A stretch of DNA of 64,000 nucleotides from Laetmonice hystrix (lineage: Eukaryota), in the NCBI GenBank assembly GCA_965235115.1, contig OZ249440.1, positions 19,406,001-19,470,000 of the forward strand. The letters run 5' to 3'. The position numbers and the translations under genes are program-made. Below the pieces are notes generated by a model. That model was not told the origin of the DNA and searched no databases. It saw only the letters and a program-made list of their open reading frames with translations. Shown here piece after piece: positions 1,794-64,000 of this stretch. How positions within the stretch are numbered: the stretch's first letter is position 1; every line of letters starts with the position of its first letter.

Positions 1794-4700
1794 GAGTGGT
1801 ATCTCTTGTTTATTATGTTAGGACCATGAAAGAAATATGTTTCGCAGGTTGAGTGCTGCAAAATATTAGTGTAATTTTTGTTTAAATTAAACTGTGAATT
1901 TTTCTATTTAAGGGTCGTTGCAGAATCCCATGCATATGTGTCCCAAATCAAAGCTCAAGCACAGGCTGATTCTGATCATGTGTAAGCTTGCTGATGGTAC
2001 GGACCCAAACACGCGTTATGAAGAAGACGAGGACCTTACAGCATTGGAGGAGGTGCTGGAACTCTTCCCAGACCTTCTGGACTGGTGTGACGACCGACGT
2101 GAATGGAACAACTGTGTACTGGAACTTCGCAGACAGGTTTGACATTCTATTATTCTGTCACCAGGTATCATACATACCTGTACAATCCTTAGAACGTCCA
2201 TAGATATTTTTGTTCAAATAAAGTCTTGAGTAATTACTCTCCCTCGTTTGAAAATTTCGAGAAATAAAAATAACATTATTCAGCCTTAGTGAACCCCTGT
2301 ACCAGTGATTTTTACCTAAATTTGAGCAGATCTTTTTAATTGTAACTTGAAAATCAGACTCATGGTCGTAGGTGAAGAACATGGCCTCCTCCCTCCAGGG
2401 ATTCGTTTAAGAGTAGCAGAATCCATCTCCTGTGATTTAAAGAAAGAGGAAGCTTACAAAGCTCATTCTTTCCATTGTAACATGTGACTTGATTTGTTAT
2501 GTTTCGCAGGCGGTGTATGTGTGCTGTGCAGGAAATAATTTCCCCCTTGCACATGAAGTCTATAGGAGAGTTTTCCCAACAGTGGTGAAGAAAGAGAACA
2601 AGGTGATAAAAAAACGTGTACATATAAAAGAGAATGATAAGAGTGTCAAGGATACTTTTTCATCACAGCTACCTCATGTTAATTGACACAAGAAATTGGA
2701 CAAGCCAATATGACTATGAATAATACTGTTTATTTTGTGGTCTAGTTTGGTGCATCAGATTATAATGAAGTTGAATTATTCCAGCGTTTAAAGGCTGAAG
2801 TTATGGCGGCCTTAGAGGAGGAATCGCCGGAGTGTAAATTGATCAGAGCCCACCCTTACTCAGTTCTCCTGGAGAAAGTTATCGTCCTCATAGAGCACAT
2901 CAACAAGCACCATATGACACCATCATCACTGCTGCAAGCTGTACAGAAACAGTTACCAGGATTTACTAGAAATGTACAGACAGATGTCCTACCAGACCTT
3001 CTCGGAGTGTATGTACCAGTCAACAAACAGTCCATTTTCTTGAATTAATGAACTGCATTTATTATTTAAGGCTCATGATTTATTAAAAAAATAATTAAAA
3101 AAATGTCCTGAAAGAAAATTAAGTTCCACAATTTAAGAGCCATGCACATTTTTTACTCTCAGCAGCTAATGATTTAATATTTTCTCCAATATTGGCTAAC
3201 CACTTTACATAGGATTTTGATGTAAGAAAAATGACAGAATACCATGTTTTTGCAGAACTTGAGTAAGCCATGTTTTTTGATGTATTGACAGGACTTTGGA
3301 CCAGCACGAAATGAGAATGTTAATGGAGGAGTCCCAAATGTCATACCTTGCTGGTAAATTTGTAGAGCTGCCAAAGAAATTGCGCCTCCAATGGAATGCA
3401 AAACTTCAAAGGATCAGGAAAGATAGGGTGAGTTTGATTTCTGAAGCTTGATAAAGTTCAGGCCTTTTATGTGGGAGGATTCATGCATTCATTTTTGAAT
3501 GGAAAGGTACCACAACCATTTAAAGGTATGTTCCAGCTGGTGCCCCTCAAAAGTCATTAGTCTAGGAATGCCGTGGTGCTCAATGTATGTACACAATGTA
3601 CACACATGTATTGAAGGTACAATTTATGTATTGATGGCAGAGATAAAATCAATTCAGATCAGTTTCTGGAGTGTGTGAGTCACCAGAATGATTCTGGCAA
3701 ATTTTAATTAAGAATAGGATAAAGAGACCAAGAATGTGACAGGTTGTTTGGTTTAACTTAGTAACCCTGTTATCATTGAATAATTTGTGTTAAAAAAAGG
3801 CTGGACATAACAAATGTTCAATTGCATTGCAGGAATATTATCTGGGCGTAGCTTCTACAGTAGTGCCATCTAGTGAGTAACCTACAAACCATAAGTCTTT
3901 GCATGTCAGTCTGCTCGTTGTGTTGTTAGAAAAACAAGGACTGTTACTGTTAGAGCAGCAGGAGTCATGCCAATCCTTCTTTCCTTTATGTTCTTTTATT
4001 AACTTTAAGAGTTATCTTTTTCTGCATCCCCTGGAAATTCCTATGAAGCACCAAACTTCCACAAGTATGCACAGCTAAAGCCATTCGTACAACACCCTCA
4101 TTCAACTACATTTTGACATTCCTACATTGACCAGCCATAAGTTCAGTCTTATGACTGAAGTGAGAATGTCAGATCACGCAGATTATGCTTTTAGCCTGTG
4201 GTGAGTTCGTATTACAAAATTCAACTGGTACAGACGTCACATAGGCACCTTTACTGATCTAGATAGATCACTGTGAGTTATCAGAAAGTAACATTTGGAC
4301 AAATATTGCCAATTTGAAAACCCATGATGGCGTCAGCACGGGCAGGCGGGTGGGCCCTGGACGGAAGGCAACTGGCAGACAGATAGCCAGGAGAATTGGT
4401 CACTTTGATCACGGATTACAGACAGTTGATGTTGTTGTACAACAACCGTTCCTTTACAGAACAACGACAAATTACAAGTATTATCGGGATCTGGTACAAA
4501 ATTTCATGTTAATTCTGATGTCTGTACCACTTTAAGCAGGTTTGAATTTTGACTACCGGGGTAATTGACTAATTTGACTTGCTTAGAAAGGAGCCGTCAG
4601 ACTATAGGCCACTGATGTGGAGACATCCATGACCTGTAGGTCTGTCAATACGTACAGATTGCCCTCCTCCCTTTACTCAGTTCAATGGTCCCTCAGTCTT

Positions 4701-7700
4701 AGCATGCATGTAAAACTGCCTGCAAGACATTGCAAATTCCACATCTCTGTGGCTAATTCTTACCATATCCCATTAGCTGTGGTAATGAAAACTGAATTTT
4801 GCTTTTTAGTTACAAGAACATTGAATTTTTGGATGAGGCTCTCAGATAGCAGCGTCCTATGAATGTCTAATCGTGCATTTTTGAAAGGACACATGTGGAC
4901 ATGCTGAGAGTGAAGAAAGAATAACATAAATACGCCTACCGGTATATGTAGTCACAGAGAGGCGTTTATTGGCATAAAGACTCACTTGGTCTGAGCGTGT
5001 CTACATATACATACCACAAAGTCAGGAGATAATTGGTCTCTTAACTATCTACTACCGACCTGTGCACATATGAAGACAGTGGCCATCAATTTGAATATAG
5101 CCCAGAACGCTCTTTGGAGCATTGATTACTGCTAGCATGTACTTCAATCACTTACAATTTAACGTGCTGTGTCACTTACAGTAGAGTTGATCACTGCATA
5201 TAAGTACTGGTATTCAGTTGATTGTGTACATGAAAATGTTCAGTGAGAAAAATAAATAAATGAAAACATGAACGAAGGAAACTGAAATATAACTACAAAA
5301 TATAACTACATGTAACCAAATATCTTATGGTCAAGTTACCTGATAGAATTCAATTGGTGTACAAAAACATTCAAGGTGGATAGTGACATAGTGATACAAT
5401 GTATGGCAATTTCTTCTCTTCCCGTCTTTTCCCCTGTAGCCCAATACCGATTTACAATAATCCTTGATGTTAAAGGAATTATTAGTTCGTATATATATCA
5501 AATTTATCTCTTGGAATATTATTTCATAAATAGTTCAAATAAAACATAACCAGTATAATATATTACAGCTGGCACAAATATTGCCACGGATGCTAGAAAG
5601 CACCAGTATGGCACAAAGTCTTGATGGCCTTCATATTGGAGAAGGGATGACAAGTTACTGTCAAGTAGGCCACTGTTAGTGCTCTGGGTTTCAAACCCGG
5701 AAAGAGAGGTTTCAGTTGTAAAACCTCTGGCATTCAGAATCATCTCCAACGTGGCATACTGCTTGGCAACCACTTCCTGAAGTAAAATGCTATCACCATC
5801 GCGACGATACATGTCGACTGTGGTTTTTAGTGACGCGAGAGTGGCGTCTAAAAGCAACAGGTGTGTGTTAGTGGCATTGGTGTTTTGTAACTTTGTGGCG
5901 CGAAGTTGCTTGCAGCTTTCGATGAGCTGAATGGCATCTTCCAATGTTTTCTTGACACCTGGTTGCTGCAGGCCGATTTGTTGGGAAAAACTGTGAGTGA
6001 AGCTGGAAGAGTCTGAGCTAGTGTTGCTAATGGCAGAGGTGCTGCTTAGCAACATGGACGGCAGGTCATTCTCAGAACTTGGAGATGTACTCCAGGTCCC
6101 TGATTTGGAGAGCTTAGTAGCACTTGGTGTCGAGGTGAGAGGTGTCGAAGTCCTTGATGTAGATATCCTGTGTGTAGTACTTGGTGTTCTAGGCGGAGTT
6201 CTTTGTATAGTGTCCCTGGGCGTAGAGCATCTAGGCGTAGAAGTTCTGGGTGTTGTGGGCCTAGGTGTTGTGGCCCGAGGTGTAGAAGTTCTGGGTGTTG
6301 TGGGCCTAGGTGTTGTGGCCCGAGGTGTAGAAGTTCTGAGTGTTGTGGCCTTAGGTGTAGAGGTCCTAGGTTGTAGCAGTCGGCGGGGGCTGTCGGGTGG
6401 TGGGCAGCGAGTTGGAGTTTGTACTGGAGGGAGTGATGTGTGACACGTTTCTCCTGACGTTTCACAGCCTGAAGAGGGGCGGAGGTCCCTGGATCGGGTG
6501 GTTGACCTTGTCCTGTATGGCCTTTCTTGGCTAGGTGTCAAAACAGGAGGTTTTTCTGGCAAAAGTTGTCTTGAATTTGCTGCAAGTCGACCAAGCTGTG
6601 GAGAGGTAGTAGAATAGTTGCAAGAAGCTTCCGTGCCAGAAGCTGATGTGATGAAGGATTTCTTTGCCGGTGTGCGACGCATGCACACAAAAACCCATTT
6701 GTCGCTCCTTGGGTCTTCAAAGACTTCATTTTCACTGTTTGATGAGTCACTGAATGGGTCAAAACTGAGGGAACCATCAGCCTTGTCAGTAGTGGAGAAC
6801 GCATTTAGGGGAAACACAGGTCCGAGGTCGTCAACAAAAAGTGGATCAAACTCATACCTGTCAAAAATTAGAGCTTTTCCCCGGAATTTTCTTTGTTTGA
6901 GTTTGTTTTGAAGGGGTTTACTGTGACTTTTGCTGCCTTGGTCGTGCTCCATGATCATGCGAGTGTCGCCAGGGATGCTGGTGGGTGCTAACTTTGATAG
7001 CGTGTCACAAGGCATGGGTTTGTCTGGTCCCAAAACCTCGACCTTGATCGGGTCATTTGGGCCCTTATCTTTCACCTTGTGAATCTCGCCCGGTGTCAGT
7101 GGGCTGACCTGAACATTTTCACATGACTCCAGTACTTTGACCCTGACAGATTCATGGTGTACGGAAACTTTGTCCTTGATTAATTCATCTAGTGTTGTTT
7201 CTTTCTCTGCAATAATCTTGCCTGGTTTCCAATATTTGACCTTGACAAACTCATTAGGTCCTAAATCTTCGACTTTAGTGCTACCTCTGCAGGAGTAAAC
7301 ATTGGTGACGTCACAGTTCTGAAGTTTGACGTCACAGGGCTGGAGATTCACATCTTTCTTTTCTCGACTCGGAGCCATCGTGATGTGGGTTGCAGGACTT
7401 TAACTTTAACGGGAAATGTCGGTCTTTACGGAGGAGACTTGGCTGCAGGCTTTAATGTCAGTGATGAGATCAAGATGAGTTCATAAGTTTGTGTAGAAAT
7501 CTTCTCGTCCGTCGACACAAGAAGAGTTCTATTTAAAGAGTCGCATCTTGTGCTTGAATGTTGCTATCTCATAATGTCGGAAGTTCTTGAATGGCAACAT
7601 GGAGCATTTTTTCAGGAATCATACAAAGTTCGCCTGAAGTGATGTGGCCAGATGTTTGTGCACGTTACTTGCCTTTCGATTTTAGTAACCTCGGTGGTGC

Positions 7701-10700
7701 TGTAGGTGGTAGCCTGTAGGTTGTGTCCGCTGGAATGTCTTGTATTCTTGTATCTCCCACCGTCGGTCGAGTGAGGACCAAGGTTCGGGTCGCTGAGATG
7801 GACCGGCCTGCCGTGTGAGGAGTTCTGTATGTGACAACCTACAGTTCGGACTGTGGGTGATGGGACCTGGGGGATACATAATATAGGGTTGGGTTGGGGG
7901 TGGTGGGAGATGGTGGGTAGGGGTGGGAGGGGGGTTGTACCCCATTGTGAGGTGGCGGACGTGTCTGAACATGTTGGGGTGAACGCGCGGGGTGAGTGGC
8001 GGGGTGTTGGTGGGAGCGTGGGTGGGTGGGTGGGTGGAGCGGGGTGGGGGGGGGGGGGCGGCAAGTCGTGTTGGCAGAGCCGTTCGAGGGCAGTCAAACG
8101 TGACACCTCAGTGAAGACATGACATTTTACTGAACCCACTTTGAGACTTTGTCAATCGTTTGTAGATGGTGCACTCAGTCAGTGGTGGATGTTAGAGTGT
8201 CAGTCAAATTACCGTCCATGATTGACGGTCGATGTAGGCCTAGTGAAACTTTCAGATTTACAATTCATTAATCCAGGGACTTTACACCTTGGTGATCGTA
8301 CATTTAAAAAAAGCTACAAAATATGTGACATTTTCTAAAAGAGCCAGCTGTTGATATTTCAAATACTTAAGCTTACAAATACCGGTAGTTTGCCGGTTGT
8401 GTTGTTCATCTAGTTTCTCCTTTGACAGGAGATAATAAAAACGTCTCTTCAAATTGAAATTGTTTCATGGATTTCAGGGAAGGCATCTGACAAGATCAAT
8501 CCAGAAGAAGCGGAATGAGAAAATGGATTTTGATTGCCTGGACCCCTACCCCCCAAATTTCCCCCTGCCTCGCATATATACATGTACATATATTGACTTT
8601 ATCATTATTTCTCTGTTTCTTTGAAGGTGGTGGAGACTCAGACGTGGTTGAAGAAAGGTGAGTTTGGAAAATGTCAAATAACGCCTTTATACATGGTTAT
8701 CACATGTGTAACCAGTTAAACTTTCCTGATCATCTGTTACACGATTCCTCTTCATCTTCAGAGTATACATATTTATCTAAATATATTCCCGGGGTACCAG
8801 TAGGTCCGTTAGGGAAAGTACGCCGGAAAGAAGACATCGCCTTGTGAAAGATGCAGATGATAGGATCAACAGTTTGCGGAGAGCAATAAAAGTGATGCAG
8901 TATGTCAATTTAAAAAAAATTGTTGCTAATATTGACACCAATGAAATTTAGTCTCTTTAGCTAACTATGGTGTGAGATCAACAGTTTGTGGAGAACAATA
9001 AAAATGATGCAGTATGTCAATTTTAAAGAAATCTTGCTAATATTGACACCACTGAAATTGAGTCCCTTTAGCTAATTAGGGTGTGAGAGAAATGGAATGT
9101 TTCATCCAACAAAGTGTGAAACACGGATTAGGGAAAAGATTATGGACTGATCTAAAACTGAAGCAACTACTAGACCTTTCATGACACTGACATTCAATGT
9201 ACTGAGACTTAGGTGTTAATCATAGCTGGCAGAGAGTGGTCACTGACCTGAGTGACACCTGGCTGAGTGTTGAACTCTGTTAACAGGAAGAACCACGACC
9301 CAGATACGAAATCAACTAGACCGAGAGACAGCTCTGGCAGTACTAGCTCACCCGAACCAGCGTCTCCCCAGGTGGAAAGAAAAAGGTGTTTCTCTAAAGG
9401 TTTCATCATTCCCAGAGGGCTCTACGGAACTGTCAGATTTTCAAGGTTCCATTTGTAAGGAAGAGTTAGCTGTGTGTGCTGCCTTAACTGTAATCTGCAG
9501 CATATTTAAAAGTGTTTAAAAACAAGCTTTGAAAACAACTGCCTTCCATTACAGAGAGCCCAGCAAACGTAAGCATGGTGACAGAGACAGAGGTTCAGGG
9601 AAAAAGAGGCCACAGAGAAACACAGAATCCCCAAAGTCAGACAGCTCAGATATGAGTGATTCGGGAAACGAGACCTCAGATAAGCGGTAAGACAAAAAAA
9701 AAAGTTACGTTTCTTGTCCTTTCAAATAAAAAGGTTGGTGCGGTGACGCAGTTTAAAAAAAACGTTCTTTCTTTTTGATGCAACCAGACAATGGCCGATT
9801 CTTCGAATGCAATTGCTGTTGGGTACATGAAGAAATCATGAAGAAAAAACTAATGCAATGATGTTCAATGTTTTTATTAAAGAGTGTGTAAAACTCACAT
9901 AAAAGGCAATAAGACTAACAGAAAAAAACAAACGCCAAAGAAAAAAAAGGCTTTTTAGGTGATGTGCGCCGGGACAAGAAACAAATTTGTTTGCCTAATT
10001 CTACTGGTGGTCCAGCATGTAAGACCATTGCTGGCTGGCCTATAGGATCAATAGAGTTTCAGAGCATGGGATTTCTTTTTCATAGCACTTGTTACAATTA
10101 GCGTTAATATCATGACATTATTAGATTTCTATTTGTGAGAAATTCTTATCTTTTTGAAAATCATGTTAAATTTACTGAAATATAAACTATGGGAGATCAT
10201 TGACTAAATGCTTCATATCGTTTGCCTTTTGTCCTGTAGAGACATTCGCACATTCAGATTTCGGCGGAATGAAAACCGTGAAGATCGCCATGCAATGGCA
10301 GAAGACGAAGATGAGGACAAGAGAACAGATTTACCAGACCTAGAAGGTACCAAACTTGAAGACTGTTATTCTGAAAGCCAAGTTGGTAAAGCAGGATTTA
10401 CTTGGGTCATGAGTGAGAAAATTTCAGTCATAAAAATACATGTATGTGTGCATGAATTTCTGGCCTTCAGCAGAGTTTGTTGTTGATGCTCTAGGTGGGG
10501 GTGACAGGAGATCGTCTGAGATAGGAAAGGTTTCTTGCGGACTTCCTGCTGCGCGGCGCCTCAGGCGTAGTCTGGCCCTCGACGTGAGCACTAGGGTGCC
10601 GGGCAAGAGGTTGCCTTGGACTGATGAGGAAGAGTTGGACTTGTATTTTGCAGTAGTGGTAAGAATACAATTGGAGCACCTTGAGGGCAATGATGGTTAC

Positions 10701-10940
10701 GGGTCTGGAATAGACTAATAGCGTGGCACCCATTGTTAAAATATATATTTAGGGTCAGTTCTGCTAAATATTTATGACTCAAACTTATTGTTTCAGGACT
10801 GTGGAGTCGGCAACTGGGCCCAAATTCAGAAGGCATATGGTTTTGACAATCGCACCAATGTTAATTTAAAGGACAAGTGGAGGACCATGGTGAACACAGG
10901 GCGCAAGCAGAAACTTGATAAGAAATATGGGAATTCTTAA
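1794..10940 (+). CDS. TERF: Telomeric repeat-binding factor (TRF1/TRF2-like), multi-exon; 5' end unresolved
   Basis: Phase-consistent GT-AG exons at 1794-1847, 1913-2136, 2510-2602, 2785-3008, 3292-3427, 3833-3872, 8627-8657, 8804-8899, 9287-9385, 9555-9686, 10240-10385, 10471-10658 and 10797-10940. N-terminal exons resemble a TRFH domain ([63 protein letters not shown]). The last two exons give a telobox Myb ([49 protein letters not shown]). Linker exons and exon 1794-1847 are less certain. A candidate further exon at 752-832 could not be joined in phase. TRF1 versus TRF2 orthology cannot be assigned. Confidence 0.88.
5519..7378 (-). CDS. Intronless 619-aa Ser/Thr/Pro-rich protein with C-terminal transmembrane segment, nested antisense in the TRF intron; unknown family
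   Basis: Uninterrupted 1860-nt ORF. It has [15 protein letters not shown] pentapeptide repeats (about 6115-6370), a helical-looking segment ([32 protein letters not shown]) and a hydrophobic C-terminus ([27 protein letters not shown]) followed by ELFMK*. No signal peptide. AATAAA on the - strand at 4965-4970. Confidence 0.72.
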   Translation of the reverse strand: MAPSREKKDVNLQPCDVKLQNCDVTNVYSCRGSTKVEDLGPNEFVKVKYWKPGKIIAEKETTLDELIKDKVSVHHESVRVKVLESCENVQVSPLTPGEIHKVKDKGPNDPIKVEVLGPDKPMPCDTLSKLAPTSIPGDTRMIMEHDQGSKSHSKPLQNKLKQRKFRGKALIFDRYEFDPLFVDDLGPVFPLNAFSTTDKADGSLSFDPFSDSSNSENEVFEDPRSDKWVFVCMRRTPAKKSFITSASGTEASCNYSTTSPQLGRLAANSRQLLPEKPPVLTPSQERPYRTRSTTRSRDLRPSSGCETSGETCHTSLPPVQTPTRCPPPDSPRRLLQPRTSTPKATTLRTSTPRATTPRPTTPRTSTPRATTPRPTTPRTSTPRCSTPRDTIQRTPPRTPSTTHRISTSRTSTPLTSTPSATKLSKSGTWSTSPSSENDLPSMLLSSTSAISNTSSDSSSFTHSFSQQIGLQQPGVKKTLEDAIQLIESCKQLRATKLQNTNATNTHLLLLDATLASLKTTVDMYRRDGDSILLQEVVAKQYATLEMILNARGFTTETSLSGFETQSTNSGLLDSNLSSLLQYEGHQDFVPYWCFLASVAIFVPAVIYYTGYVLFELFMK

Positions 10941-12370: not shown

Positions 12371-15300
12371 CGCACACGTATGGCAACAGGTTTTCTTCCA
12401 GTAACTGTTGCGACAGTTCAGACCTGGCCATTCGCGGATGTTTCCAGTGCAGTCGTTGCTCTTGTTTGGATCATCCTTGCAAGCTACAAAACACAACACA
12501 ATATGTCCTGATTTAGACAGAAAATTCATAGCTTCATTTTTCTGTATTGTTCCCTCTAGAAATATATCACATAATAAATTTTCAGGAATATGTTGGCATA
12601 ATTACATTTTCTGACAGCAGCCCGAAACTCAAGACAAACAGATGCACACCAAATCGTTAATTCGGCCCGAAATAATCATTTTTACAAACAGAGCCAATAG
12701 TTTTATTCACTTGCGAACATTGTTTTTTTTTTATTTTAGAAATTTCGCTTCTCTTATATATTTGCGGTCATTGCAATGTGTTGACGAGCATTAGGGCCAG
12801 GAAAGAGGTTTTGTTTTTGGATATTGATTTATGGATATTGTGGACCATGATGCCCCTTTAATGTTGAGATACGTACAGCTTGGAATGTCCGTCACCGGGT
12901 GCTGGACCTGACAGCTGTGATGGGGCATGCCTAGGGGAGAGCATAAAAGGTACATGGTTAAATATTTGTAGGGGGCCTATATTTCGATATGTTTTATTCA
13001 AATATATTTTCAAATGTCCACGCAAAAGTGTCATTGTGTAATAATCAAAACCCTGCGTATAAAAAATTCTAACGTCACTTACTTGGTTTATTTGACTTGG
13101 ATACACAGAAGCCATGGATACACCACTGAAAGACACAATCAGATGCGAGCACAATATGCTAGAATACAGTCTACGTAATATACGACGCTGTATGTTACAT
13201 ACGGATCCGGGGGGGGGGGGGGATCCCCCCCCCTTGCTTACCCAATTCCTAATTATATACTCATTTTCAAATAATTTTGTCATCTTGAGATTAGACACAT
13301 CACCTGAGTGGACATGATGAAGCAAATGGTTGTAACTAGGCCTATATGCCTATATGATACAGCCCTACATAGGTTACCAGGAGCTTTAGTAATGCAAACA
13401 ATCATTAATTGTTTTCCTGGGCCCCGGCCAGTATGTTATTATAGTATCTGTTTTACTGTCTCAAGCATACACAATATGTATTGCCTTTTTCTACACAAGA
13501 CGCCTCGTACATATTGGGTGCATTATTCTATCTCTCTGTCATCAGTAATCCCACTAAGGTTCTCTGGAACTTCCGGCCCCTTTCTAGTGTGTTCAAAGAC
13601 TCATATACAGGGCCTACTCGTTTGTATGAATGAAGGGGTGATATTAAAAACAAACTCCCACCTAAAGAATTTGGACCCACTTTTAAGGAGAGCAGAGAGT
13701 TCCCATTGCAAGTGGAGAGTGTCGGTTATTATGTACGTAAAATTTCCCGCCAGGCGGCGGTCCCTACCTTGCTGCCCCCCGCACACGGTGTGCCGTCTGC
13801 AGGTCGAGCCATGCCATAGTTACATGAATTGCTGCTGATAAGTGAGCACCAGAGACTCTGACAGAAGTCATCCCGATCAGCCGGTTTCCACTGAAAAACA
13901 ATCAGGATTGTTTGCTATATTCAGTGACTTTTGTTGTGATAGTCTTGGGTTATTTACCTTTCCGTTGTCAAATTAGTCGGCCGAATCTCACAGCTATGAC
14001 GTTTTTGTTTGTTTCTTGTCTTTGTGGCTGTCTGTNNNNNNNNNNNNNNNNNNNNNNNNNNNNNNNNNNNNNNNNNNNNNNNNNNNNNNNNNNNNNNNNN
14101 NNNNNNNNNNNNNNNNNNNNNNNNNNNNNNNNNNNNNNNNNNNNNNNNNNNNNNNNNNNNNNNNNNNNNNNNNNNNTTGTTGTGATAGTCTTGGGTTATT
14201 TACCTTTCCGTTGTCAAATTAGTCGACCGAATCTCACAGCTATGACGGTTTTGTTTGTTTTTGTGTTTGTTTCTTGTCTTTGTGGCTGTCTGTCTNNNNN
14301 NNNNNNNNNNNNNNNNNNNNNNNNNNNNNNNNNNNNNNNNNNNNNNNNNNNNNNNNNNNNNNNNNNNNNNNNNNNNNNNNNNNNNNNNNNNNNNNNNNNN
14401 NNNNNNNNNNNNNNNNNNNNNNNNNNNNNNNNNNNNNNNNNNNNNNNNNNNNNNNNNNNNNNNNNNNNNNNCACAGAACAGGTGCCTTTGGTGACCTTGG
14501 TGCCGTACACATCCTTACACTGGTCGTCCACACTGGCGTGCTCTCCCGGCAGTCCGCTCACTTTCGGCACACCATTCCGACAGTAGTTGTCCTCCAAACA
14601 TATCCGCGGGAATCTGTCAACAATCGGAAAACCTCGGCAATTTCCGGAATTATTCAGCGGCTGACAAAATAGGCCTACTTGTCGACGGATATATACTAAA
14701 TGTATTTAATAGACTTTGCCGTGAGGTCGTGACCACTCGTGAGAGCAGTGATCGCGCTGTCCTCCAACATGCTGTCCCATGCCACAACCCCTGTCTACAA
14801 GCAATTTGAACCCAGCAGGCGTTATGCTACAGATTGATTGTGTCGATAGTTTATCTAAGGGTTTCCCTACTTTGAATTGTCCTCCCCACGGAGGCATTTC
14901 TTGGCGTCACTCAAGCTGCAGGAGGAGAATTTAAAGGGTTCCTCCTTATTGGAACCGTCCAATTTGGGAAGGCTGGAGCCCATAATGTTTCCACGACTGC
15001 CTGAGCACCCGTTCTCACCATCATGTCGCATGCCCAGGCTGAAAATAGCATTACATTATAATTAGCCCAGCAATACTGTAGTGCTACCCTTCATTAGGAA
15101 GGATCGGCTGCCAATGAAAATAGTCTATACCTGCGAGCAAGGAATCTACCAGGCGATATGAAAGAAGTCCACGCACTATTATAGGCTATGGGGGACTAAG
15201 CTTACTTAGAACATGGACTACTGCTTTACCACCAATAATAGATCTACTCTTGCTCTTTCATAAATATAAAAGTGCGGCGTTACAAGTAGGAATGTCTTGC

Positions 15301-63299: not shown

Positions 63300-64000
63300 A
63301 TGATGGAGGCGGTCATCGTTGCCGGCTGTATAGTAGCTGTCCTAATTGTTATCACAGTTATTTTAGTCGTTACTTATGTATGTCACCAAAAGCGACAGGG
63401 ACAGGCCCCTCAACATCCCACGGTGGACAGTAATGTTTACTACCGACATCAACAGCCGATGTCGACGATTGAGGAGGAAGTCGTTGAGAACGATGAAATA
63501 GTTGAGATTCCCTTGAAATACCAAGTCGGCTACAGGCCTGAGTATGGAGAGAGAGAGGCATCACAAACGTTGTCTGCCCCTGGTCGTATCATAGGGAGAG
63601 TGACGTCAGAGGAAGTCTCCAAAGGCCGACATGTCAAAGATTTAGCTGTGCCCCCATATGGAAGGGTCAGTGAGACGCAGATATCCGCATCCACTGCGCA
63701 TGCACCGCCCGCTTTTGGACGTGTCATTATGGAACCGTCTGCTGTTCAAAGGCCTGACAGGGAAAGCTCAACGTCAGTGACGTCACAGATTCAACAGCGA
63801 GAACCTAACCTCTATACAACTACAGGAACCCGTCATTATAGTGACCATGACCGTTTAAGTAGACACCAAAACTATACGCATGGTGAAATATTGAATGGAG
63901 GACGGGCCCAGACCGTGACGTCACACCAACTACCGGAAACCAACCCTACTGGTCGTAGTTATTACGACACGAGCCGCCAGCAGTGGTGTTACCATAATGA
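63300..64000 (+). CDS. Single-pass membrane protein ORF, >233 aa, running off the window end (absent from the ORF track)
   Basis: MMEAVIVAGCIVAVLIVITVILVVTYVC-HQKRQ... stays open to 64000, with a Tyr-containing tail (VYYR, RPEYG, VPPYG, LYTT, SYYD). A possible phase-1 acceptor precedes it at 63260-63261. Confidence 0.7.
   Translation, partial: MMEAVIVAGCIVAVLIVITVILVVTYVCHQKRQGQAPQHPTVDSNVYYRHQQPMSTIEEEVVENDEIVEIPLKYQVGYRPEYGEREASQTLSAPGRIIGRVTSEEVSKGRHVKDLAVPPYGRVSETQISASTAHAPPAFGRVIMEPSAVQRPDRESSTSVTSQIQQREPNLYTTTGTRHYSDHDRLSRHQNYTHGEILNGGRAQTVTSHQLPETNPTGRSYYDTSRQQWCYHN

What the first reader, a model, noticed from the sequence alone, without database searches (positions are those of the whole stretch)
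3873..8626. Unknown tail-anchored protein gene nested antisense inside the telomere-binding factor gene
Seen: one TRF intron is about 4.7 kb while the other modelled introns are under 0.6 kb. It contains an intronless 619-aa antisense ORF with a downstream AATAAA, no signal peptide, and a single hydrophobic helix five residues from the C-terminus. Established: this topology defines tail-anchored proteins, and meiotic telomeres are tethered to the nuclear envelope by C-terminally anchored proteins (MAJIN in the TRF1-TERB1-TERB2-MAJIN complex; Bqt4 in fission yeast). Inference, speculative: a lineage-specific, possibly germline, membrane protein physically embedded in, and perhaps co-regulated with or antagonistic to, the shelterin gene. 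I see no sequence similarity to MAJIN, and the lack of introns suggests a retrogene or captured sequence.
Basis: partly seen in the sequence, partly recalled or inferred. Interest (0 to 1): 0.72.

Follow-up and report, generated by a model that had tools for sequence, protein, structure and literature searches.

The report
Orphan tail-anchored gene nested in TRF intron
A real, single-copy, fast-evolving gene for a mostly floppy, membrane-anchored protein of unknown family sits backwards inside the one large intron of a worm's telomere-factor gene; this nesting is a common, usually incidental arrangement, and nothing found here ties the protein to telomeres.

Summary
A 619-codon ATG-to-stop ORF lies at 5519-7378 on the minus strand. 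It sits inside a 4,754-nt GT-AG intron (3873-8626) of a plus-strand gene that ends in a TRF-type telobox Myb domain. The host's other ten modelled introns are 138-629 nt. The ORF is far longer than chance allows, is coding-like throughout, and is single-copy. It has no TE or viral features, no Pfam hit and no structural match. An exhaustive HMMER search found one true homologue. That homologue is an uninterrupted 435-aa ORF (a 441-aa second copy comes from the same assembly) from another organism. It shares four features: an acidic-Ser/basic motif, an S/T/P-rich basic disordered region, a three-helix region, and a C-terminal transmembrane helix. I read the gene as a taxonomically restricted tail-anchored protein gene. 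Constraint looks weak: pN/pS is about 1 from 17 haplotype differences, but every indel in the ORF is in frame. No RNA data were available, so expression, strand and germline bias are untested. Synteny in the relative could not be checked because no DNA was served. The MAJIN-like telomere-tether idea has no support: no similarity, no TRFH-docking motif, and the literature reports canonical TERB1-TERB2-MAJIN homologues in annelids. The retrogene idea is also unsupported.

The parts
5519..7378 (-). Uninterrupted coding sequence of the nested gene (619 aa plus stop)
   Evidence: homologue P0002
5537..5611 (-). C-terminal transmembrane helix (about residues 590-614). It is followed by a 5-residue tail at 5522-5536.
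   Evidence: Kyte-Doolittle scan; predicted helix 589-618; conserved VP[FY]...F.PA..Y pattern in P0002/P0004
5726..5962 (-). Predicted three-helix region (residues 473-551), the best-conserved block of the protein
   Evidence: many invariant columns between 479 and 551; helices 473-496, 505-527 and 531-550 at pLDDT 50-67
6089..6388 (-). Basic Ser/Thr/Pro-rich disordered region (residues 331-430, net charge +18, 63% S/T/P). It contains a 45-nt (15-aa) tandem repeat at 6233-6380 and many TP sites.
   Evidence: all other genome hits of the protein fall in this low-complexity part
6638..6754 (-). Conserved linear motif block (residues 209-247): an acidic Ser cluster followed by KW..CMRR.P.KK
   Evidence: second independent BLASTP block with P0002, 50% identity, E 8e-9, outside the part used as search query; invariant columns
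6755..7378 (-). Poorly conserved N-terminal 208 residues with four [DEK]-x-(L/K)GP motifs, predicted disordered
   Evidence: codon-usage frame test still favours the ORF frame here
7306..7334 (.). Two perfect TGACGTCA (CRE-type) palindromes 21 nt apart, inside a 21-nt tandem duplication in codons about 15-24
   Evidence: (D3)
7401..7800 (-). Candidate promoter/5'UTR region. CpG observed/expected is 0.85-1.02 against about 0.2-0.6 in most of the intron. A TTTAAATA box lies at 7530-7537, 152 nt upstream of the ATG. This is inference only.
4965..4970 (-). First AATAAA downstream of the stop (549 nt), a possible poly(A) signal
   Evidence: not beyond chance
3873..8626 (+). Host-gene intron (4,754 nt, GT..AG) that contains the nested gene
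3833..3872 (+). Host micro-exon upstream of the large intron
   Evidence: the frame stays open through it
8627..8657 (+). Host micro-exon downstream of the large intron
10797..10940 (+). Last host exon, carrying the second half of the telobox Myb domain and the stop
   Evidence: Pfam Myb 6.5e-5; PDB TRF2/TRF1/Terfa E 2.6e-10 to 1e-7
4220..4535 (.). MITE-like high-copy repeat with 20-nt terminal inverted repeats, in the same intron 3' of the nested gene
   Evidence: depth in the thousands; I1

Best explanation
This is a genuine, single-copy, taxonomically restricted protein-coding gene with one coding exon. It is nested antisense in the only large intron of a TRF-like telobox gene.

The product is about 590 residues of mostly disordered polypeptide facing the cytosol or nucleoplasm. 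In order, it has:
- a variable N-terminus
- a conserved acidic-Ser/basic linear motif
- a strongly basic Ser/Thr-Pro-rich stretch with many proline-directed phosphorylation sites
- a conserved three-helix region
- a C-terminal tail anchor

Inferred mechanism: with no signal peptide and a terminal transmembrane helix, the protein would be inserted post-translationally. The flanks of the helix are acidic or neutral rather than basic, so the most likely destination is the ER/nuclear-envelope membrane system. There it would act as a membrane-tethered scaffold. Its helical region and short linear motifs would recruit partners, and its basic disordered region would be tuned by phosphorylation.

The nesting most likely reflects gene birth or insertion in a permissive intron, which thereby became large. 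It does not imply shared function with TRF.

Shown here: ORF reality, single copy, homologue, topology, host gene model. Inferred: membrane destination, scaffold role, promoter.
For: ORF length, periodicity and codon-frame tests. Single copy with no paralogue.

The homologue P0002 was found with the C-terminal 179 aa only, at E 1.3e-10 in 1.84 billion proteins. It also shares a second, independent block at residues 209-247. The overall order of regions is the same, including a terminal transmembrane helix.

Four of four indels in the ORF or between the relative's two copies are multiples of 3, against 0 of 9 indels in the flanking intron (Fisher p=0.0014, with an ascertainment caveat).

There is a single hydrophobic segment at the C-terminus and none at the N-terminus. 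AF2 models give three helices plus a terminal helix and disorder elsewhere.

The host model is one open frame across 11 GT-AG exons. Antisense nested genes are common and mostly unrelated to their hosts (PMC4394429).
Against: There is no RNA evidence at all. The three runs that hold the stretch are genomic DNA from one sample.

Haplotype differences in the ORF are 13 nonsynonymous to 4 synonymous, so pN/pS is about 1.0. Values of omega at or below 0.3 are rejected at p about 0.02. SNP density in the ORF is not lower than in the intron (list truncated). Present-day constraint is therefore weak or absent.

Only one homologous cluster exists in very large databases.

Structure models have low confidence (pLDDT 36-50).
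Confidence: 0.6

Rival explanations
1. The ORF is intact but no longer, or only marginally, functional in this species. It would be a dying or very young lineage-specific gene drifting neutrally inside the intron.
For: pN/pS is about 1 from 17 differences, including W50L and P208T. ORF SNP density is at least as high as in the flanks. There is no expression evidence. The N-terminal 208 residues are not alignable with the homologue.
Against: A 619-codon frame with no stop is not expected to persist neutrally. The frame-specific codon signal runs along the whole length. Blocks are conserved at about 30% overall identity with a distant homologue that is intact in both of its copies. The only indel in the ORF is in frame, whereas 9 flanking indels are not. 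In the C-terminal third the differences are 2 synonymous to 1 nonsynonymous.
Confidence: 0.15
2. One reading: a lineage-specific inner-nuclear-membrane tether for (meiotic) telomeres. It would work like MAJIN, Bqt4 or MJL-1 and would be functionally coupled to, or co-regulated with, its host TRF gene.
For: It has a C-terminal anchor and a long unfolded linker. It has a strongly basic S/T-P-x-x repeat region (+18 per 100 aa) that could contact DNA and be controlled by CDK. It has a conserved basic RR.P.KK patch that could serve as a nuclear import signal. Known tethers of this type are fast-evolving sequence orphans (MJL-1: PMC9908027). It is physically embedded in a TRF-like gene.
Against: There is no MAJIN Pfam match, no folded N-terminal domain and no TRFH-docking [FYI]xLxP motif. 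TERB1, TERB2 and MAJIN homologues are reported in Annelida, so the canonical tether is probably present (PMC7227075). My own exon-wise scan for MAJIN was uninformative. Nested genes are mostly unrelated to their hosts. Basic S/T/P-rich disordered regions are very common. There are no expression or localisation data.
Confidence: 0.05
3. The ORF is only part of a larger spliced minus-strand gene, or its true start is a downstream Met. The 619-aa intronless model would then be incomplete or over-extended.
For: No transcript data are available. The homologue's ORF begins opposite about residue 73. Two CRE palindromes lie just inside the 5' end of the ORF and could be promoter elements. An AG lies 20-25 nt upstream of the ATG.
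Against: There is an in-frame stop 7 codons upstream of the ATG. The ATG context has A at -3 and G at +4. Codon-frame signal is present from codons 1-100. The terminal transmembrane helix followed by a stop fixes the 3' end.
Confidence: 0.12
4. The ORF is a transposon-, virus- or retrocopy-derived sequence captured in the intron.
For: It is an intronless ORF in an intron that also holds a MITE.
Against: It is single-copy; all other genomic hits are to the low-complexity TP repeat. No LTRs, TIRs or target-site duplications surround it. It has no Pfam domain. It has no relatives in viral contigs or in 1.84 billion representative proteins other than one cellular-looking ORF. There is no parental multi-exon gene in the genome.
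Confidence: 0.03

Closest known systems
Tail-anchored (TA) membrane proteins as a topological class (for example emerin, Sec61-beta, cytochrome b5)
   Same: There is no signal peptide. A single transmembrane helix lies at the extreme C-terminus with a luminal tail of 0-5 residues. The bulk of the protein is on the cytosolic/nucleoplasmic side. The topology is conserved in the homologue.
   Different: It has no sequence or fold relation to any described TA family. The targeting pathway and destination membrane are untested.
[quoted passage not shown]
   Same: It has a C-terminal membrane anchor, a basic region upstream of it, and a thematic link through the TRF host gene.
   Different: There is no Pfam match at E<=1 and no folded N-terminal TERB2-binding domain. 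It is about 2.4 times longer than the roughly 250-residue mouse MAJIN (transmembrane helix at 232-251). Annelid MAJIN homologues are reported separately (PMC7227075)..
C. elegans MJL-1 and fission-yeast Bqt4 (non-homologous nuclear-envelope chromosome tethers)
   Same: They are single-pass proteins anchored near the C-terminus, and MJL-1 is a fast-evolving orphan (PMC9908027). This shows such a function can hide in orphan proteins.
   Different: MJL-1 is described as a small protein, and Bqt4 is reported to carry an N-terminal DNA-binding motif. No N-terminal fold is predicted here. No functional data exist for this protein. The resemblance is topological only.
Antisense intronic nested genes (for example OMG/EVI2A/EVI2B in NF1 intron 30)
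   Same: It is an independent gene wholly inside a host intron on the opposite strand, in an intron much larger than its neighbours. About two thirds of nested genes are antisense, and most are unrelated to their host (PMC4394429).
   Different: The host here is a shelterin-type TRF gene in an annelid. Independent transcription is not yet shown.

Membership tests
Tail-anchored protein (topological class) | Single transmembrane helix within about 30 residues of the C-terminus | tested here: met
   All Kyte-Doolittle windows above 1.6 start at residues 587-600 of 619. The helix is predicted at 589-618 with a 5-residue tail. The same holds in P0002, with no tail.
Tail-anchored protein (topological class) | No N-terminal signal peptide or other membrane segment | tested here: met
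   The N-terminus is hydrophilic and there is no other hydrophobic window. No dedicated signal-peptide predictor was available.
Tail-anchored protein (topological class) | Post-translational membrane insertion (GET/TRC40, EMC or SND) and membrane integration | not testable with these tools
   This needs an in vitro insertion assay, or carbonate extraction of the tagged protein.
MAJIN (PF15077) | Sequence match to the MAJIN family profile, or an N-terminal TERB2-binding domain | tested here: not met
   No Pfam family at E<=1. The N-terminal 470 residues are predicted disordered.
MAJIN (PF15077) | C-terminal transmembrane helix anchoring to the inner nuclear membrane | tested here: inconclusive
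   The terminal helix is present. The membrane of residence is unknown.
MAJIN (PF15077) | Meiosis-specific expression and association with TRF1/TERB1/SUN1 | not testable with these tools
   No RNA runs. No TRFH-docking [FYI]xLxP motif was found, but this does not test binding.
Nested (intronic, antisense) gene | Lies wholly within one intron of a host gene, on the opposite strand | tested here: met
   The host model has 11 GT-AG exons in one open frame from a TRFH-like region to the telobox Myb domain. The intron spans 3873-8626 and the ORF spans 5519-7378 on the minus strand. The model is not verified by RNA.
Nested (intronic, antisense) gene | Independent transcription unit with its own promoter and poly(A) site | tested here: inconclusive
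   There is only motif-level evidence: a TTTAAATA box, CpG observed/expected near 1 at 7401-7800, and an AATAAA at 4965-4970. No transcripts are available.
Processed retrogene | Parental intron-containing paralogue elsewhere in the genome | tested here: not met
   There are no paralogous matches to the N-terminal, C-terminal or whole protein apart from low-complexity repeat hits.
Processed retrogene | Poly(A) tract remnant and target-site duplications | tested here: not met
   There is no A-tract after the AATAAA and there are no flanking direct repeats. An old insertion could have lost them.
Transposon or viral ORF | Multiple dispersed copies, terminal repeats, or TE/viral protein domains | tested here: not met
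KASH-domain protein | Transmembrane helix followed by a luminal peptide of about 30 residues ending in PPPX | tested here: not met
   The luminal tail is 5 residues here and 0 in P0002, with no PPPX.

The most novel reading that the evidence does not exclude
The protein is a lineage-specific inner-nuclear-membrane adaptor. Its layout would be a conserved basic import-signal-like patch, then a linker of more than 300 unfolded residues, then a tail anchor. Its basic S/T-P-R repeats would bind chromatin or telomeric DNA under CDK control. Its residence inside the TRF gene would couple its expression, by antisense transcriptional interference or shared chromatin, to shelterin dosage. It would be an annelid analogue of MAJIN/MJL-1 that arose independently.
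Probability: 0.04. Interest if true: 0.8.

Novelty: new member of a known kind. Interest (0 to 1): 0.3.

Why it matters
It adds an undescribed protein family, so far seen in two organisms only, to the set of tail-anchored proteins. It also documents a clean case of an antisense nested gene accounting for the single oversized intron of a shelterin-type gene in an annelid.

That is useful for annotation, because the gene would be missed or mis-merged by homology-based pipelines. It is also a small data point on how orphan genes settle in introns.

It would become important only if expression and localisation tied it to the nuclear envelope or telomeres. Nothing found here suggests that beyond topology and address.

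Tried and rejected
Searches with no usable result:
- Pfam on the whole protein: nothing at E<=1.
- Word-indexed homologue searches with the whole protein, residues 1-290 and residues 455-619. The only hit was a low-complexity match, P0001.
- ESM Atlas with the protein and with P0002.
- Profile of the C-terminal alignment against PDB sequences. The best hit was DotM at E 0.011, taken as chance.
- Foldseek of the C-terminal model against AFDB clusters. E was at least 0.4 and TM below 0.45, and the model itself has low confidence.
- Metagenome and viral contig scans with the alignment.

P0003, the second hit of the exhaustive search, is a 1,527-aa repeat protein. It matches through 16 weak repeats of one acidic helix. 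I rejected it as spurious.

Other dead ends:
- The exact protein is not in the 15-billion-sequence collection.
- The sequencing runs that hold the locus turned out to be genomic DNA: depth is uniform over intron and exons, and the MITE has depth in the thousands. They say nothing about transcription.
- Exon-wise genome scans for the Pfam TRF (TRFH) and MAJIN families found nothing anywhere, including the controls, so they are uninformative.
- TRFH-like exons gave no PDB or Pfam hits individually.
- I did not run complex prediction, because I do not claim that the protein binds TRF.


Full report
**Observation**

The window carries an ATG-to-stop ORF of 619 codons at 5519-7378 on the minus strand. 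An in-frame stop lies seven codons upstream of the ATG (open frame 626 aa). The ATG context has A at -3 and G at +4.

The ORF cannot be a chance frame. In 2,000 first-order Markov simulations of the same composition the longest ORF was 234 aa. The probability of 619 stop-free codons from base composition is about 1e-13.

The period-3 signal is 5.8 in the ORF against 0.9-1.4 in the flanking intron. I scored the ORF with a codon table built from the host gene. The ORF frame wins in all eleven 100-codon windows, including the first. The other two frames contain 19 and 47 stops.

The only strongly hydrophobic segment is at residues 587-614, five residues from the end, and the N-terminus is hydrophilic. 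The first minus-strand AATAAA downstream is at 4965-4970, 549 nt after the stop. The hexamer is frequent in this window, so this carries little weight.

**Host gene**

I built an independent model from canonical splice sites. It has eleven plus-strand exons between 1915 and 10940, which join into one open frame of 463 codons ending in a stop. The introns are 373, 182, 283, 405, 4754, 629, 169, 553, 148 and 138 nt.

The last exon encodes a telobox Myb. Its best solved-structure matches are TRF2, TRF1 and zebrafish Terfa (E 2.6e-10 to 1e-7), and Pfam gives Myb at 6.5e-5.

The helical N-terminal exons look TRFH-like to me from memory. I could not confirm this exon by exon. The gene is therefore 'TRF-like' on the strength of its Myb domain and architecture. 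It is single-copy, at least for its third modelled exon. No RNA was available to verify the splice model.

**What the nested ORF is not**

It is single-copy in the 627-Mb assembly. The whole protein, its first 290 residues and its last 179 residues each find only themselves. All other hits fall in the Thr/Pro/Arg low-complexity repeat.

No long terminal or inverted repeats or target-site duplications surround it. There is no Pfam domain. No relative was found in viral contigs or JGI metagenomes. A transposon, viral or recent-retrocopy origin therefore has no support.

The intron does contain an unrelated MITE at 4220-4535. It has 20-nt terminal inverted repeats and hundreds of genomic copies.

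**Homologue**

Word-indexed searches and the ESM Atlas found nothing. The exhaustive HMMER search with the last 179 residues found two proteins among 1.84 billion representatives.

P0003 is a 1,527-aa repeat protein that matches through sixteen weak copies of one acidic helix. I discard it.

P0002 is a 435-aa ORF on a 95-kb contig of ENA assembly ERZ26222911. A 441-aa variant, P0004, sits on a second contig of the same assembly and is probably the other haplotype. P0002 aligns over the helical region and the terminal hydrophobic helix.

It also shares a second block at residues 209-247 of the query, with 50% identity and E 8e-9. That block lies outside the sequence I searched with, so it confirms homology independently.

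The three-way alignment shows the same order of parts:
- a D.LGP motif
- an acidic Ser cluster followed by KW..CMRR.P.KK
- a basic S/T/P-rich region
- a well-conserved helical block (many invariant columns between 479 and 551)
- a linker
- a terminal transmembrane helix with a shared VP[FY]...F.PA..Y pattern

The homologue is likewise an uninterrupted ORF. Its taxon is unknown. No DNA was served for its contigs, so I could not test whether it also lies inside a TRF intron, nor compute dN/dS.

**Structure**

AlphaFold2 on these shallow alignments gives low confidence (mean pLDDT 50 for the C-terminal 150 residues and 36 for the whole protein), but the picture is consistent. Residues 1-470 have essentially no structure. 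Three helices are predicted at 473-496, 505-527 and 531-550, then a linker, then a terminal helix at 589-618. Fold and profile searches gave only chance-level matches.

Residues 331-430 are 63% Ser/Thr/Pro with net charge +18. They include a 45-nt tandem repeat (3.3 copies) and about a dozen TP sites.

**Selection**

The three public runs that hold the locus are genomic DNA from one sample. Depth is uniform across intron and exons. They therefore say nothing about expression, but they do reveal haplotype differences.

Seventeen listed SNPs fall in the ORF: 13 nonsynonymous and 4 synonymous. With 1,416 nonsynonymous and 441 synonymous sites, pN/pS is about 1.0. Values of omega at or below 0.3 are rejected at p about 0.02. 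The SNP list was truncated by the tool.

The only indel inside the ORF is a 6-nt in-frame deletion. The three indels between P0002 and P0004 are also in frame. None of nine indels in the flanking intron is a multiple of three. Fisher's test gives p=0.0014, with the caveat that the relative's copies were found as ORFs.

In the C-terminal third the SNPs are 2 synonymous to 1 nonsynonymous. Overall the pattern fits a fast-evolving, largely disordered protein whose frame and C-terminal module are kept. A gene drifting towards loss in this species cannot be excluded.

**Interpretation**

The best reading is a taxonomically restricted tail-anchored protein gene nested antisense in the TRF-like gene's large intron. 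The flanks of the transmembrane helix are acidic or neutral rather than basic, which is why I favour the ER/nuclear-envelope system over mitochondria. That is inference from general knowledge of tail-anchor sorting, not a test.

The nesting itself is ordinary. About 10% of Drosophila genes and about 1% of human genes are nested. Two thirds of these are antisense, and most are functionally unrelated to the host (PMC4394429).

The telomere-tether idea rests only on topology and address. Against it:
- no MAJIN match
- no folded N-terminal domain
- no TRFH-docking motif
- published TERB1-TERB2-MAJIN homologues in Annelida (PMC7227075)

The MJL-1 precedent shows that such tethers can be orphan proteins (PMC9908027). 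The basic S/T-P repeats, together with a conserved basic patch, a long unfolded linker and an anchor, are compatible with an inner-nuclear-membrane protein. I therefore keep the idea as a low-probability novel case (about 4%).

Other notes of this scan call the organism an annelid. I did not verify that myself.

**Verdict**

Its family is undescribed, and its architecture and genomic arrangement are of known kinds. Interest is modest. The scan had not reported this feature on other DNA.

Noticed in passing
window 4220-4535: MITE-like element of about 316 bp with 20-nt terminal inverted repeats. At least 40 scored copies at 80-94% identity lie on many chromosomes, with 721 first-look candidates. 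k-mer depth is in the thousands in the DNA runs.
   Followed up: partly
window 7306-7334: Two perfect TGACGTCA (CRE-type) palindromes 21 nt apart, created by a 21-nt tandem duplication that also duplicates a 7-aa peptide ([14 protein letters not shown]) near the N-terminus of the nested ORF. The window holds 14 such palindromes against about 1 expected, including a cluster of three at 63601-63923.
   Followed up: partly
window 7750-8100: C-rich (minus strand) low-complexity tract upstream of the nested ORF, carrying a spurious 175-aa Pro-rich ORF (7612-8139). It is length-polymorphic in the DNA runs (34-nt skip at 7746-7781; 2- and 4-nt indels).
   Followed up: no
window 1915-10940 (+): The TRF-like host gene has two consecutive micro-exons (40 and 31 nt) on either side of the large intron. 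It is single-copy for the exon tested. Its exons upstream of 1915 (start codon, promoter) were not modelled.
   Followed up: partly
window 6233-6380: A 45-nt tandem repeat (3.3 copies, 90% matches) encodes the [15 protein letters not shown] repeat. It is absent from the homologue, so it is a species-specific expansion inside the coding sequence.
   Followed up: partly
window about 14040-14500: Runs of N (masked sequence or gaps) inside a short duplicated segment.
   Followed up: no
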